From positions 1 to 64,000 of the forward strand of contig FLMG01001623.1 of assembly GCA_900088475.1 (NCBI GenBank): a DNA stretch of 64,000 nt. The letters are read 5' to 3'. The notes beneath the pieces were generated by a model. That model ran no database searches, was not told where the DNA came from, and worked only from the letters and a program-made list of their open reading frames with translations. Source of the DNA: Hyphochytrium catenoides. Lineage: Eukaryota > Protista > Hyphochytriomycota. Position numbers and translations under genes: made by a program. Shown here piece after piece: positions 42,982 to 54,058 of this stretch; position 1 is the stretch's first letter, and each line of letters begins with the position of its first letter.

Positions 42982-44100
42982 ATGAGCCCAAAGAATGAGA
43001 ACCGTGGAAGCTTTGGCACCGATCCTTCAAGTCCCTCCGGAAGTGACAGCAGAAACAACCGCTACAAGGTTCTCGTCACGGGCGGTGCTGGGTACATTGG
43101 CAGCCATACCGTGGTAGAGTTGTTAGACGCTGGCGTTTACGATGTCGTAATCGTTGACAATCTCTGCAACTCGTCAGAAGAGAGTGTCCGTCGTGTCAGG
43201 AAAATCACTAATACTGACCAACAGAGCCTGCCATTCTACCAGGTAGACATACGAGACCGCGAGGGCCTCTCAGCGGTCTTTGAAAAGGAGGGCCCCATTG
43301 ATTTCGTCATACACTTTGCGGGTTTGAAGTCCGTCACTGAGTCCAATGACAAGCCTATTGAATACTTTGACGTAAACTTTTCCGGCACTATGAGCCTGCT
43401 ATCTGTGATGGACCAGCATGAGTGCCGTAAGGTCGTCTTCTCGTCGTCCGCAACAGTGTATGGGACGGCACCTTCTCCCATCAGCGAGGACGCCCCAGTT
43501 GGAGTTGGCATCACTAACCCCTATGGGCGGAGCAAGCTGCTTGTTGAGGATGCTCTCCGGTCACTTCATGACTCTCCCGTTGGGTCGAAGTGGGGCATAG
43601 TCATGCTGCGTTACTTTAACCCAGTTGGAGCCCACGAGAGCGGTATGATTGGGGAAAGCCCCAATGGACCCCCGAACAACTTGATGCCCTACGTCTCGCA
43701 AGTTGCCGTGGGTGTCCGTCCTGTCCTGACTGTCTTTGGCGATGATTGGGAGACACGCGATGGTTCTGGAGCACGAGACTTCATCCATGTAGTGGATTTG
43801 GCTCGCGGCCATGTGGCGTCTCTTAGACGCCTCCAGGATTCTGAAGGCACCTGCGACGTCTATAATCTTGGCTGCGGAAATAGTATCACGGTACTGGAGA
43901 TGGTTCGAGCCATGGAGAAGGCTTCAAAGAAGCAGGTACCCTACAAATTTGGACCCCGTAGACCTGGAGATCTGGGAGAGGTTTACTCTTGTCCGGACCT
44001 GGCCATGAAGGAGCTTGGATGGAAAGCAGAGAAGACTGTGGATGATATGTGTGAAGATGTCTGGCGCTGGCAGAGCAGAAATCCAAAGGGTTATAACTGA
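42982..44100 (+). CDS. GALE: UDP-glucose 4-epimerase (intronless)
   Basis: VLVTGGAGYIGSHT, VIHFAGLKSV, FSSSATVYG, NPYGRSK, LRYFNPVGAHESG, PNNLMPYV, RDFIHVVDLA, RRPGD, WRWQSRNPKGY. Confidence 0.97.
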   Translation: MSPKNENRGSFGTDPSSPSGSDSRNNRYKVLVTGGAGYIGSHTVVELLDAGVYDVVIVDNLCNSSEESVRRVRKITNTDQQSLPFYQVDIRDREGLSAVFEKEGPIDFVIHFAGLKSVTESNDKPIEYFDVNFSGTMSLLSVMDQHECRKVVFSSSATVYGTAPSPISEDAPVGVGITNPYGRSKLLVEDALRSLHDSPVGSKWGIVMLRYFNPVGAHESGMIGESPNGPPNNLMPYVSQVAVGVRPVLTVFGDDWETRDGSGARDFIHVVDLARGHVASLRRLQDSEGTCDVYNLGCGNSITVLEMVRAMEKASKKQVPYKFGPRRPGDLGEVYSCPDLAMKELGWKAEKTVDDMCEDVWRWQSRNPKGYN

Positions 44101-47946: not shown

Positions 47947-49008
47947 CTACTGCGTAGCACTCACGCGCTTATCCTTGAGAAAGCCAAGCTCAACAAGGTT
48001 GTTACCAGTATCTACAATGCTTTCCTTTGCAGGCTTAAACGTCGCTCCAAGCTCTTGCACAATCTTATCATGGCTGAAGGAGTACGCTCTACCACTGTAT
48101 GAGCGGATATACTGGCCCGCCTGTCCTTTCTGCGTGTAGGAATATAGCCAGGCAATAGGCTTAGGCAGGACGATATTGGCGGGCAGCGGGTACTTTTGGA
48201 AGCCATTTTCCTTGAAGGTCTTGCTAATATCCAGAAGCTCCAGCGACTCATTGACGGAGAGATACCTTCCCTTTGCTGCCTTGTTCTCCATAGCAAGAAT
48301 GTGATGCTCAGCTGTGTCTCTGACGTCGACTATGGGATAACTCATCTTGAAGACCGCGGGTGCCGCGCCAGTCAAGAACTGATAGAGGATGGAAACAGAC
48401 GGGTTCAGCGTCTTAGTGAAGGACGGGCCTATCACGGTCCCAGGGTGGATAGTCACGAGCTCAAATTTCTTCTCTGCTGGTAGTTCGTCCACAAATTTCC
48501 ATGCGGCCTTCTCTGCCTCTACCTTACTGAAGCAGTACGGATTGTTGGTAAGAGATGAACTGGTATTCCAGTTGCTCTCATCGAAGACAGTTCCATCCGC
48601 AGGGCTGTCCTGCTGGATAGCAGCGATAGAGCTCGTCAGGACGACCTTCTTCACCGACCCCGCCTTCTCACAAGCACGAAGAACGTTAAGCGTGCCCTTC
48701 AGAGCAGGATCTACGAGGTCTGTTTGTGCGTTCTTGGCTGCCATCGTATACGGAGAGGCTGTGTGGAGGACATATTCGATGCCCACGCAGGCAGCATCGT
48801 AGGCGCCTTCAGTAAGCAGGTCCGCCTCTACAAGCTCCAGATTTTCAGCATTGGTGAAGGCCTTGAGATGCGCTCCTTTCTCCACACCTCTCACGGTGCC
48901 TCTTACTTTGTATCCTCGTTCCAGAAGGGATTTGACGATCCAGGATGCGATATATCCATTCGCTCCGGTGACTAGTACTGGAGCTTCAGTGATGCGTGAA
49001 GAGGCCAT
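47947..49008 (-). CDS. Extended SDR, dihydroflavonol reductase/cinnamoyl-CoA reductase-like aldehyde reductase (intronless)
   Basis: VLVTGANGYIAS, VRGTVR, VLHTASP, VDPALKGTLNVL, VLTSSIAA, YCFSKVEAEKAAW (YxxxK), VDVRDTAEHHI. Confidence 0.93.
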   Translation of the reverse strand: MASSRITEAPVLVTGANGYIASWIVKSLLERGYKVRGTVRGVEKGAHLKAFTNAENLELVEADLLTEGAYDAACVGIEYVLHTASPYTMAAKNAQTDLVDPALKGTLNVLRACEKAGSVKKVVLTSSIAAIQQDSPADGTVFDESNWNTSSSLTNNPYCFSKVEAEKAAWKFVDELPAEKKFELVTIHPGTVIGPSFTKTLNPSVSILYQFLTGAAPAVFKMSYPIVDVRDTAEHHILAMENKAAKGRYLSVNESLELLDISKTFKENGFQKYPLPANIVLPKPIAWLYSYTQKGQAGQYIRSYSGRAYSFSHDKIVQELGATFKPAKESIVDTGNNLVELGFLKDKRVSATQ

Positions 49009-50906: not shown

Positions 50907-53900
50907 CTATAACACGAAGGACTCACAGTGAAGGTGAACAACAACCTTTTGCAGCCGTAGGCCATGAACTGCCTGCTGAGCCTGACTAACCCAAAGATCT
51001 GGTCCACTCGTCACTAAGGCGATACTCGACATTCTGTCTGGACGTGACGAGGCCAGTTGAATGGCATATTCTTGCACTAATGCAGGTATGTCAGGTCTGC
51101 CAATAAACACTTGCAGCGGGGCTGGCATCTTCAGCATTTCTCTAATATCCTCTGGGTCTCTTCCGGTGAAGAAGATCTGCACCTCTTTCCTATAGATGGT
51201 ATATAAGTCCACCGTGGACTTGAGCGTCTCTTGGAACTCTAAAGCCATTGACGAGCTAGCTGTGGCCCAGCAAAGGATAAGCTTCTGATCCGCACCTGCT
51301 CTATCGGCAAACAAGCTAAGCATAGGCGTCACTCCAATACCTGCACCCATAAAAAGCACCAGATCATAGCGGTGGAGCTGTAGACTGGGGTTGCCATAGG
51401 GTCCAGACACGTAAATCTGTTTATCCTTCAGCATGCCACTGCGAGCCAGGAGGTACATCTTCGCCGTAAAGTTGTTCCTTGAGCTCTCCTTCATCAGAAT
51501 AGTGAACTCGCAGGAGTCGCCCTTCTTCTTCTCTTTGTTCCGCTTCGCAGACAGCTTCATATCATCGTGTTGCGGTGACATGGTGGGCGCACCTCGGGCC
51601 TGCATGACGGTGCCGGGCTTTTTAATGGGCTCCATATCATCGCCCTCTCCGTTAGAGTTGTTTGCTAACTCCATGAAGTCTGGAGGGCCTATCGGGTTGA
51701 TACTAAAGGCCCTACGCTCTGGTTCTGCATTTCTACATTCGTCCATATAGTAGTCAGCGCCCGACGGTGAGGTATTGTTAGGAGTGCCTTTTGGAACCAC
51801 CATCTGCGGTGAGGCTGTATCTGCTCCTGTTTCTCTCCTTCGCCTCAGTTTAGGAAGATAAGCTCCGAATATCCTTGCTATGGGTCCTCTGTGCTTGTGG
51901 AGAGAGACGTTGACCGCTCGCTCCGGCACTGATACGATAGAAAAAGGATGCGGTACCAGGGAAATGGACGGTACCATGATGAAGATGTAGTCTCCTCCCT
52001 TAAATTCGAAGTTTTTCTTCTTGATGATGAGCCTGACAAAGTTACCCTCCCGGCCTCCGCCCAGGGCCTTACAGTCCACGATCTTGGCCGGCCTTGTGAG
52101 GAGATCTAGGCCCACAAGGATCCAGTCAACCAATAGGAGGACTATTGACGGAATCATCATCATCAATAGGTAGTTGTTCTTTCGGTTATGAAGGAGAGAC
52201 ATAGCCACCACCGCATAGGAGGTTAACAGGTGCGAATAGTAGAAAACGCTGAACATTAGCCTGCGGACGAGAGGCATAGAGCCGGTGACCAGCACAATGA
52301 GGAGGAAGAAGGTGATGAAGCCTGCCATCCCGCTCTGTTCAAACATCTGCCAAGTGGTGAAGATCTTGAAGCCAATGTTGGTCATTGTGGTGAAGGTGAC
52401 AATCATCGTCCCACCGTGAACCAGAGCCATGAGACCAAACACTGTTCCGAGTCCTCGATGCAGCACCAGCGCTCTCTCATAGGAAATGCCTGTAGTCCTG
52501 ACGAAGAAGCTGTACTTAGTCACCGGCAAGAGGATCAGAGACAGCGGCATGAAGCACGTCATTCCCAAAGCGCGGGCCCAAGGCACTGCTCCACCGTAAC
52601 CTAGCGGGATATCCTTGAAGAACATATAGCTCCAATAGTACCAGATGCCCAGCGTGACAAGAAAGCCAACCACAATGAGTAGCTGACCCCAAGAGACAGC
52701 CCAGAGTTGTGGCAGAAAAATTCGTAGCAAGAAACTGTTTGGGATGTTGTTCATCACGCGATGATGGTGCAGGAAGGCGCGAACTGGGCTATAGGGGTCC
52801 TTCAAATGGTTCAACGTAATTGCCCCTGCGAAGAAGAGAATAACATAGATGCCATACGCATAGGCGTGGTAAGGGAAGGGCATCTGGATCTGATGAGTCC
52901 CAGCAACGTCCACCATGAAGTCTTCTTCGATCTCTGCCGCTCTATCTACATCGTTGGTCTTGCCTCTCGTGTTGACCGTTAGAACCCGAGTTGTGGAGTT
53001 ATCGGCCAGCTCTGCAGTGACGTTGAAGTTGGCGCTGATAACGCTGATGTCATAGGCAGAACTCGGATCTAGTGACCGCAGATAGACGGACCCAGCCTGA
53101 CGAGGCACTTCAATTGTACGAGAGAACGAAGAATCCTTAGCTTTGAAGGTGATTTGAAGGGAGCAGACACATGTCTCTCGTGGCTTGGGATCCCAAGAGA
53201 GCTTGATTGCTGTCTTTCCGACGGCCGTTGTGACCTCCAACGGCTTCGGCTTGCTGAAGCGGCATGAGGGCCTTGAAGTCCGAACTGTGGGGCCTCCAGG
53301 ATGTGAGATATCATAGGTATAGTCCGGTTCATCTCCAGGGTTCCAGATGCAGCACGGATCTCCTAGCTCGTCGCCGTTCGTGAGTCCGTCAAAGTCCGAA
53401 TCCTGCAACGCAGAGTGATAAGTCCAGAGGTATAACGCAACAAAGAGAGCTAGACGAGTAGCTGCCGTGTGACATTCAATGAAGACTGTCTCTCCTTCCT
53501 TGGTGTGTAAGGGAAAGATGTATATAGATACAGAGGGAGAGACACATAGAGAGAACTTACCGCTAAACAGAGCCCAGTCGTCCACTGGTGAAAGGCGTAT
53601 GTGGCGGGTTGTCCAAGCACTTTGAACTCCGGAGGGATGATTTGTGGCAGCTGCGGGAACCCCAATTTTCTATGGACATGGGCATAGTCCTCTCCTCGTT
53701 CTTCAAGGAGAGATTGACCCTTCTCTTCCACAACCTCTCCATCTGGAAGAGACTTTTGGTTCATCTCCTGCAGTCTCCGGGCAAAGCCCATCTGTTCAGG
53801 TGTGGCATAAATGGGAATGTACCCTCCAAAAGCCAACCCAAAGAGGTTTGGAACTGTACCAGGTCCGCCTCTGCAAGTGACATGTCCAACGGCGCCGCAC

Positions 53901-54058
53901 GGCCCTCCAAAACAATCTGCCCCAGGCAAACATGGAACATTTACTGCGTTTGGGATTCTTCTCAGGTACATCCGACGCCCCTCCACGTCTCTGACCGTAA
54001 GCCATGAACAGGCAAGAGTCAGGCAGAGCAAGACCACTGCGAGTCTGTTTGAACCCAT
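50907..54058 (-). CDS. Ferric reductase-type flavocytochrome with an N-terminal secreted temptin-like domain and an FN3 domain
   Basis: Exons 54058-53561 and 53402-50907. Signal peptide; RIPNAVNV...AVGH...NLFGLAF...WTTGLCLA|DSDFDGLTNGDELGDPCCIW...ISHPG (temptin); FN3 (IKLSWDP...LDPSSAYDISVISAN). Heme His pairs HRGLG...VH and SHLL...LH; HPFSI, GPYG, GAGIGVTPMLS, SGP, CESF. Confidence 0.88.

What the first reader, a model, noticed from the sequence alone, without database searches (positions are those of the whole stretch)
50907..54058. Temptin-FN3-ferric reductase fusion: a possible ligand-capturing surface redox enzyme
Seen: removing intron 53560-53403 fuses a signal peptide and temptin-like domain (IPN...GH...N-x-FG-x2-F...WT-x2-LC-x2-DSD-x-DG-x2-NG-x-ELGDP-x-C-x-W...SHPG) to FN3, TM helices, and FAD/NADPH domains. 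Known: temptin is an Aplysia pheromone-complex protein, and the domain also precedes copper monooxygenases. Both heme His pairs here are 14 residues apart, as in yeast FRE1 (gp91phox TM5 is 13 apart), and TM4 has AG rather than the NOX TG motif, so it is FRE-type. The CGP motif reads SGP, and a ~135-aa low-complexity insert splits the FAD domain. Inference: an extracellular, possibly Ca/metal-binding head on an FN3 stalk presents a ligand or partner enzyme to a transmembrane electron chain.
Basis: partly seen in the sequence, partly recalled or inferred. Interest (0 to 1): 0.78.

Follow-up and report, generated by a model that had tools for sequence, protein, structure and literature searches.

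The report
Temptin-headed ferric-reductase-type membrane flavocytochrome gene
This is a real two-exon protist gene for a membrane enzyme that carries electrons from NADPH inside the cell to the outside. It has an unusual calcium-loop "temptin" head on a fibronectin stalk, a design shared by many uncharacterised protist proteins that I found in no paper.

Summary
On the minus strand, exon 1 (54058-53561) and exon 2 (53402-50907) are joined across a phase-0 GT-AG intron of 158 nt. The product is 997 aa: signal peptide, Temptin_C, FN3, an extra TM helix, a six-helix ferric-reductase domain with four haem histidines, then FAD and NADPH domains.

No RNA run was listed, so the splice rests on comparison. 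Uninterrupted homologues carry the junction motif contiguously, and a profile built from homologues alone runs across the junction.

At least 41 database cluster representatives share the temptin-plus-reductase design. They include Cafeteria, Cyanophora, Galdieria, Colponema and Ploeotia. All are uncharacterised, and no paper I searched describes the design.

By the published NOX-versus-FRE signature the protein is FRE-type: Met replaces NOX2 His119 and Ala replaces Thr178. His spacing is not diagnostic, because it varies within the family.

The temptin fold has no match in the PDB. In relatives temptin sits at the distal tip, like Reeler, sometimes ahead of DOMON domains. This fits a binding or docking head rather than a proven redox relay.

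This scan already reported a paralogue on another piece of the same genome (s1-331069).

The parts
53561..54058 (-). Exon 1 (166 codons): start codon, signal peptide and the N-terminal two thirds of the temptin domain
   Evidence: frame, ATG; Temptin_C profile 2-47; hydrophobic segment 7-25
53403..53560 (-). Intron, 158 nt, GTAAGT...TTGCAG, phase 0; holds an in-frame stop if retained
   Evidence: junction supported; no RNA evidence
50907..53402 (-). Exon 2 (831 codons plus TAG): end of temptin, FN3, 7 TM helices, FAD and NADPH domains
53286..53983 (-). Temptin domain, spliced residues about 26-205 (the span includes the intron)
53603..53821 (-). Lineage-specific loop of about 70 residues inside the temptin domain (residues about 80-152), between N-x-FG-x2-F and the conserved Trp. 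Several relatives have inserts at the same place
   Evidence: coding-frame score weak but best in frame
53367..53402 (-). EF-hand-like calcium loop D167-S-D-F-D-G-L-T-N-G-D-E178, the first residues of exon 2
   Evidence: D, D, D, E invariant in 55 temptin domains
52965..53255 (-). FN3 domain, residues about 216-312
   Evidence: 27.6 bits, cut-off 25; beta-sandwich strands, pLDDT about 85-90
52803..52868 (-). Extra transmembrane helix TM0 (residues 345-366), which puts the head outside the cell
52107..52700 (-). Six-helix ferric-reductase domain (residues about 401-598) with haem ligands H481, H495, H557, H571. M499 stands at the NOX2 His119 position; A526-G527 stand at Thr178-Gly179
51396..52088 (-). 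FAD-binding domain (HPFS at 651-654), split by the insert
51522..51899 (-). Disordered low-complexity insert in the FAD domain, residues 668-793
   Evidence: pLDDT 30-44
50910..51383 (-). NADPH-binding domain: GAGIGVTP at 852-859, S965-G-P in place of C-G-P, C-terminal E-S-F

Best explanation
**What it is.** An intact nuclear gene for a 997-residue type-I, seven-helix membrane flavocytochrome of the ferric-reductase (FRE) branch of the FRD superfamily.

**How it works.** Cytosolic NADPH reduces FAD. Electrons then cross the membrane through two b-type haems held by H481/H557 and H495/H571. They leave at the outer face to an extracellular acceptor, most probably a chelated Fe(III) or Cu(II) species rather than O2.

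**The head.** Outside the membrane, on one FN3 domain, sits a disulphide-rich temptin domain with an EF-hand-like calcium loop. It most likely acts as a distal binding or docking module that brings a substrate, wall or matrix component, or partner protein to the outer haem. It is probably not an electron relay itself.

**Shown here:** the gene model (by comparison only), the domains, the topology logic, the cofactor motifs, and the lack of the NOX signature.

**Inferred:** the electron acceptor, calcium binding, and the role of the head.
For: - **Architecture and motifs:**
- **Fold:** the exon-2 model has pLDDT 79.7. Its best structural matches are NOX2, DUOX1, NOX5 and SpNOX, at E 1e-18 to 1e-10.
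- **Topology:** signal peptide plus 7 hydrophobic helices, with K/R-rich predicted inside loops.
- **FRE-type call:** Zhang 2013 (PMC3591440) names NOX2 His119 and Thr178 as marks of ROS-making NOX. Here they are Met499 and Ala526. None of the 34 temptin-bearing relatives with a full TM domain has His or Thr at those positions. Pfam reports no EF-hand or other cytosolic regulatory domain.
- **Conserved design:** 41 of the 151 best cluster representatives carry temptin ahead of the reductase domain. Two are transcriptome-derived full ORFs, from Ploeotia and Colponema.
- **Head as distal module:** the nearest relatives without temptin have Reeler-FN3-EGF-DOMON heads. P0057 and P0049 have temptin at the tip followed by DOMON domains.
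- **Calcium loop:** D-x-D-x-D-G-x-x-N-G-x-E is invariant or nearly so in 55 temptin domains.
Against: - No RNA evidence for the splice or for expression.
- No enzyme of this clade has been assayed, and the NOX/FRE signature is a correlate, not a proof.
- The Arg matching NOX2 Arg54 is kept.
- The only solved structures in the superfamily are NOX and DUOX types, so fold matches cannot separate the two activities.
- This protein alone among 69 relatives has Ser for the Cys of the C-G-P motif, which might lower or change activity.
- The temptin domain has one invariant His (in the G-H motif) of unknown role, so a metal site cannot be excluded.
- The closest relative is only 29% identical.
Confidence: 0.6

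Rival explanations
1. It is a ROS-generating oxidase built like DUOX: an ectodomain, an extra TM helix and a NOX core. On this reading it reduces O2 to superoxide or H2O2 at the outer haem, and the temptin head shapes or uses the product.
For: - Best sequence and fold matches among solved structures are NOX5, NOX2 and DUOX1.
- The Arg matching NOX2 Arg54 is conserved.
- Many close relatives have the NOX-like 14/13 His spacing.
- Zhang 2013 notes that some members lacking His119 may still make ROS, for example NOXC and the preNOX group.
- The extra-TM layout parallels DUOX.
Against: - His119 and Thr178 equivalents are absent here and in all 34 relatives checked.
- No EF-hands and no peroxidase-like domain.
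- No FRE or FRO structure was among the PDB matches, so the NOX matches may simply be the only solved relatives.
- The nearest clade described in the literature is the DOMON-bearing eFRE group, which is counted as metalloreductases.
Confidence: 0.15
2. It is an electron supplier for a secreted or surface redox enzyme, such as a copper monooxygenase or an LPMO-like protein. The temptin head would dock that partner, possibly by temptin-temptin or calcium-dependent contact.
For: - Temptin heads copper type II monooxygenases in lophotrochozoans, where it stands in the place of DOMON (PMC2762978; Atlas clusters).
- A first-reader note reports a temptin-cytochrome b561 fusion in this same genome (s1-349996, untested).
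- Atlas clusters also pair temptin with MopE-type metal motifs and a lipid desaturase.
- Free-standing temptins exist in Phytophthora and many protists.
- The title of Cummins et al. 2007, listed among the references printed, calls Aplysia temptin the 'glue' of a protein complex.
Against: - No partner has been identified.
- No temptin-copper-monooxygenase gene has been shown in this genome.
- Domain co-occurrence is circumstantial.
- Temptin also sits on bacterial Ig/HYR surface proteins with no redox link.
Confidence: 0.17
3. The gene model is wrong, or the gene is decaying. Either there are two separate products (a small secreted temptin fragment and a reductase), or the enzyme is inactive because of the C965S change and the large inserts.
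For: - No RNA support.
- The Ser for the C-G-P Cys is unique among 69 relatives.
- There are two large inserts, in the temptin loop and in the FAD domain.
- The protein lies on a long branch, with at most 29% identity to any relative.
Against: - Neither exon alone holds a whole temptin domain, and the profile runs through the junction.
- The read-through product stops 36 codons into the intron.
- All other cofactor motifs and all four haem histidines are intact.
- A 997-codon frame is open.
- Inserts at the same temptin loop occur in relatives.
Confidence: 0.08

Closest known systems
DOMON-bearing eukaryotic ferric reductases (eFRE clade of Zhang et al. 2013, model M10: Naegleria gruberi paralogues, Albugo laibachii F0X089, Phytophthora infestans D0MUZ3)
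   Same: - FRE-type core lacking the NOX signature.
- N-terminal extracellular module ahead of the reductase domain.
- Found in stramenopiles.
- Among the 150 best hits, relatives without temptin carry DOMON, Reeler, FN3 and EGF heads.
   Different: - This protein has no DOMON.
- Its head is temptin plus one FN3, a combination not mentioned in that paper: temptin 0 occurrences, fibronectin 0.
DUOX (dual oxidase)
   Same: Signal peptide, extracellular domain, one extra TM helix, then the six-helix haem domain and the FAD/NADPH domains. It is a structural match (description).
   Different: - No peroxidase-like domain and no EF-hands.
- NOX signature His119 and Thr178 are absent.
- Only about 12-13% identity in the structural alignment.
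Saccharomyces FRE1 and plant FRO ferric-chelate reductases
   Same: - NADPH/FAD/bis-haem transmembrane reductase.
The FRE1 value itself is from memory and was not checked.
- Lacks the NOX signature.
   Different: - No temptin or FN3 ectodomain in FRE1 or FRO.
Lophotrochozoan temptin-DBH-like copper monooxygenase and the Aplysia pheromone temptin
   Same: The same Temptin_C domain at the N-terminus of an extracellular redox enzyme (PMC2762978; Atlas clusters).
   Different: There the catalytic partner is a soluble copper monooxygenase, or nothing at all. Here it is a membrane flavocytochrome.
FRRS1/SDR2 and plant CYBDOM proteins (Reeler and/or DOMON plus cytochrome b561)
   Same: Extracellular accessory modules on a transmembrane two-haem electron carrier. 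CYBDOM HYP1 has been shown to reduce ferric and cupric substrates (PMC10784544).
   Different: A different membrane core (b561, driven by ascorbate) and different heads.

Membership tests
FRD superfamily, eukaryotic three-domain core (Ferric_reduct + FAD_binding_8 + NAD_binding_6) | All three Pfam domains present above the gathering scores, in that order | tested here: met
   53.9, 32.7 and 25.9 bits against cut-offs of 28, 22 and 22.2
FRD superfamily, eukaryotic three-domain core (Ferric_reduct + FAD_binding_8 + NAD_binding_6) | Two pairs of haem-ligating histidines, in TM3 and TM5 | tested here: met
   H481/H495 and H557/H571. These columns are invariant in 115 relatives, apart from alignment gaps at the last one
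FRD superfamily, eukaryotic three-domain core (Ferric_reduct + FAD_binding_8 + NAD_binding_6) | Cofactor motifs HPF[ST], GxGxxP, CGP, and a C-terminal aromatic residue | tested here: inconclusive
   HPFS, GAGIGVTP and E-S-F are present. CGP reads SGP, unique among 69 relatives
NOX group (ROS-generating NADPH oxidases, Zhang et al. 2013 signature) | His at the NOX2 His119 position (four residues after the outer TM3 haem His) | tested here: not met
   Met499. The csNOX5 alignment shows H-x3-H against H-x3-M. The family columns hold no His
NOX group (ROS-generating NADPH oxidases, Zhang et al. 2013 signature) | Thr178-Gly179 dipeptide in TM4 | tested here: not met
   Ala526-Gly527
NOX group (ROS-generating NADPH oxidases, Zhang et al. 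2013 signature) | NADPH-dependent superoxide or H2O2 production | not testable with these tools
   needs an enzyme assay
Eukaryotic FRE-type metalloreductases | Three-domain core without the NOX signature and without EF-hands | tested here: met
Eukaryotic FRE-type metalloreductases | Reduction of Fe(III) or Cu(II) chelates at the cell surface | not testable with these tools
   needs expression and an assay
Temptin_C (PF24784) | Match to the Pfam profile above the gathering score | tested here: met
   Exon 2 alone scores 40 bits against a cut-off of 27, and exon 1 adds profile positions 2-47. The spliced product scores 98.7 bits against a profile of 18 homologues
Temptin_C (PF24784) | Conserved core: P-N, G-H, Trp, the DxDxDGxxNGxELGD loop, and the Cys pattern | tested here: met
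Temptin_C (PF24784) | Calcium binding, and the partner-binding ('glue') function of Aplysia temptin | not testable with these tools
   sequence pattern only
DUOX | Extracellular peroxidase-homology domain and cytosolic EF-hands | tested here: not met
   no such Pfam hits at E up to 1
DOMON-bearing eFRE clade | One or more extracellular DOMON domains | tested here: not met
   No DOMON hit in this protein. DOMON is present in relatives P0101, P0097, P0058, P0057 and P0049

The most novel reading that the evidence does not exclude
Temptin is not primarily a pheromone fold. It is an ancient extracellular accessory module of trans-membrane electron-transport systems, across eukaryotes and partly in bacteria. 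It occupies the same distal position as Reeler and keeps the same company as DOMON: FRE-type reductases, cytochrome b561 and copper monooxygenases. On this reading it is a calcium-dependent docking site that couples the membrane electron exit to a specific extracellular acceptor or partner enzyme, and the mollusc pheromone would be a freed copy of this module.
Probability: 0.25. Interest if true: 0.75.

Novelty: new variant of a known kind. Interest (0 to 1): 0.5.

Why it matters
**For the enzymes.** Ferric reductases and NADPH oxidases are studied mainly in yeast, plants and animals. What their extracellular decorations do is largely unknown.

**For temptin.** Temptin has had only a pheromone-complex role in sea slugs.
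- Temptin heads an FRE-type reductase in protists from several supergroups.
- Relatives of that reductase carry Reeler or DOMON heads in the same position, and some carry temptin and DOMON together.

These two findings give temptin a testable molecular context: surface redox chemistry and metal handling. They also add a branch to the modular FRD superfamily.

**For experiments.** The gene is a ready construct for asking whether an ectodomain sets the acceptor specificity of a transmembrane electron chain.

Tried and rejected
- **RNA support.** The look-up of sequencing runs listed no RNA run.
- **Word-index protein searches.** The search with the P0001 temptin region found only itself. The exhaustive profile search was therefore needed.
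- **ESM Atlas.** A search by features with P0002 gave nothing usable.
- **Temptin fold search.** A confident model (pLDDT 90.6) gave no Foldseek match at E up to 10 and no VIA match at Z 2 or more. The structure therefore gave no functional lead.
- **Hidden intron behind the 70-residue temptin loop.** I considered this. The in-frame GT..AG candidates either have weak donors or would delete the conserved N-x-FG motif. Relatives have inserts at the same loop. I rejected it, though without RNA proof.
- **His-pair spacing as a NOX/FRE discriminator.** Rejected, because both 13 and 14 occur within the family.
- **Single origin of the fusion.** A tree of 115 TM domains is too poorly resolved: 55 of 112 inner branches are open. 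Temptin presence is clustered (13 changes against about 29 in shuffles) but does not form one clade.
- **Spliced protein in the tools.** It could not be handed to the fold or family tools by reference. The exons were searched apart, and P0001 was used as a proxy for the temptin fold.
- **Gene neighbours.** They are unrelated: epimerase/dehydratase genes.
Full report
**Gene model.**
On the minus strand an ATG at 54058 opens a 166-codon exon ending at 53561.
- A 158-nt intron follows (53560-53403, GTAAGT...TTGCAG, phase 0). Exon 2 runs from 53402 to the TAG at 50909-50907. The product is 997 residues.
- If the intron were retained, translation would stop 36 codons into it.
- No RNA run was listed for this stretch, so the junction rests on comparison.
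- Pfam's Temptin_C profile is cut by the intron: positions 2-47 in exon 1, and 62-97 in exon 2 at 40 bits against a cut-off of 27.
- Two homologues encoded as single uninterrupted ORFs (P0001, P0002) carry the junction motif QW..C..DSDGDG..NGDELGD contiguously.
- A profile built from 18 homologous temptin domains, without this gene, scores the spliced product at 98.7 bits. Exon 1 alone scores 31.5, exon 2 alone 52.0 and the read-through 31.0. One aligned piece crosses residues 156-202 without a gap.
- I take the splice as well supported but not proven.

**Anatomy.**
- Signal peptide: hydrophobic segment at residues 7-25.
- Temptin domain: about 26-205.
- FN3: about 216-312 (27.6 bits, and a beta-sandwich in the model).
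- An extra helix TM0: 345-366.
- Six-helix ferric-reductase domain: about 401-598.
- FAD domain with HPFS, then an NADPH domain with GAGIGVTP and a C-terminal E-S-F.
- Seven helices, with K/R-rich loops on the predicted inside, put the head outside and the dehydrogenase in the cytosol.
- The exon-2 product folds with mean pLDDT 79.7.
- The model matches NOX2, DUOX1, NOX5 and SpNOX at E 1e-18 to 1e-10.
- The temptin domain carries a lineage-specific loop of about 70 residues. It lies between N-x-FG-x2-F and the conserved Trp. Several relatives have inserts at the same spot. A hidden intron there is unlikely.

**NOX or FRE?**
- Zhang et al. 2013 (PMC3591440) single out NOX2 His119, Thr178 and Gly179 as marks of ROS-making oxidases, as opposed to presumptive metalloreductases.
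- Here the equivalents are Met499, Ala526 and Gly527. The alignment to csNOX5 shows H-x3-H against H-x3-M.
- None of the 34 temptin-bearing relatives with a full TM domain has His or Thr at those columns.
- Pfam reports no EF-hands.
However, many close relatives have 14/13, so spacing does not classify the family.
- The Arg matching NOX2 Arg54 is kept.
- This protein is the only one of 69 relatives with Ser in place of the Cys of C-G-P.

**How common is the fusion?**
- An exhaustive profile search gave 9954 FRD hits.
- Of the 151 cluster representatives listed, 41 carry a temptin domain ahead of the reductase domain.
- Named sources include Ploeotia vitrea and Colponema vietnamica transcripts, two Cyanophora paradoxa genes, Galdieria phlegrea, and Cafeteria roenbergensis (KAA0177850.1, 'hypothetical protein'). 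Two more come from EukProt without a species name (prefixes Clim_ and Hpha_), and one cluster includes a TARA Oceans scaffold.
- All are unnamed or carry generic names.
- This gene's nearest relative is only 29% identical.
- A tree of the TM domains is too weakly resolved to count origins.
- This scan had already reported a temptin-FN3-reductase gene on another piece of this genome (s1-331069). My count agrees with the earlier follow-up's 'about 30 relatives'.

**What is the head for?**
- A confident model of the temptin domain has no counterpart in the PDB, by Foldseek or by an exhaustive VIA search. The model used P0001 as a proxy and reached pLDDT 90.6.
- Across 55 temptin domains the invariant or nearly invariant residues are P-N, G-H, one Trp, two Cys and the loop D-x-D-x-D-G-x-x-N-G-x-E-L-G-D. 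That loop has the spacing of an EF-hand calcium loop. Calcium binding is inferred from this pattern only.
- Context is more telling than structure:
  - Relatives without temptin among the 150 best hits carry Reeler, FN3, EGF and DOMON heads. This is the DOMON-eFRE clade that Zhang 2013 described from Naegleria, Albugo and Phytophthora.
  - Two family members have temptin at the tip followed by DOMON domains.
  - Elsewhere temptin heads copper type II monooxygenases, in the place where DBH has DOMON (PMC2762978).
  - It also co-occurs with MopE-type metal motifs, a lipid desaturase and bacterial surface Ig domains.
- Temptin therefore behaves as a distal tip module of extracellular redox proteins. 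Positionally it resembles Reeler, and it is not a simple stand-in for the DOMON haem relay.
- CYBDOM proteins give a tested precedent for ferric and cupric reduction by a decorated transmembrane haem carrier (PMC10784544).

**Literature.**
- 45 papers in the library use the word temptin. Those listed deal with molluscs, annelids and other animals, apart from a Phytophthora secretome paper that only cites the 2007 temptin paper and one unrelated preprint.
- In a combined search for temptin with NADPH oxidase, b561, ferric or DOMON, none of the 15 listed papers held the word temptin.
- Zhang 2013 mentions neither temptin nor fibronectin.

**Verdict.**
- A real and ordinary-looking gene, but a member of an undescribed, widely spread variant of FRE-type reductases.
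- Most likely it is an NADPH-driven surface metalloreductase with a calcium-stabilised binding head (confidence 0.6).
- The rivals are a DUOX-like oxidase, an electron supplier for a docked partner enzyme, and a wrong or decaying gene model.

Noticed in passing
P0057 (1244 aa, EukProt transcript) and P0049 (1943 aa): These family members combine temptin at the N-terminal tip with DOMON domains before the reductase core. P0057 has three DOMON domains. P0049 has Fn3_assoc/CHB_HEX_C plus one DOMON. Temptin and DOMON therefore co-occur and are not simple alternatives.
   Followed up: partly
P0014 (2323 aa): Pfam finds a complete Ferric_reduct-FAD-NAD unit within the first 1760 residues, and the profile search matched a further reductase domain at 1755-1976. 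This is either a tandem double reductase or a merged gene call.
   Followed up: no
ESM Atlas clusters found with the temptin model; P0202: Temptin_C also occurs in bacteria. It is found with MopE-type metal-binding motifs in Myxococcota, with Ig-like/HYR surface domains in Verrucomicrobiota, and in a Krumholzibacteriales MAG protein. A haptophyte cluster joins it to a lipid desaturase.
   Followed up: no
Alignment A2 (temptin domains of 18 family members): By eye, in about seven of the 18 sequences a His precedes the conserved R-x-Y-L motif, at about where the signal peptide should end. That would leave an N-terminal His near the invariant G-H. The window's protein has Arg there. A copper His-brace in part of the family is conceivable but untested.
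   Followed up: no
window 42982-44100 (+) and 47947-49008 (-): Two NAD-dependent epimerase/dehydratase-family ORFs lie downstream of the gene. The first is like GDP-mannose 4,6-dehydratase. There is no evident link to the reductase.
   Followed up: no
window 51008-51006 (-), residue S965: This is the only Ser among 69 aligned relatives at the Cys of the C-G-P nucleotide-site motif (64 have Cys).
   Followed up: partly
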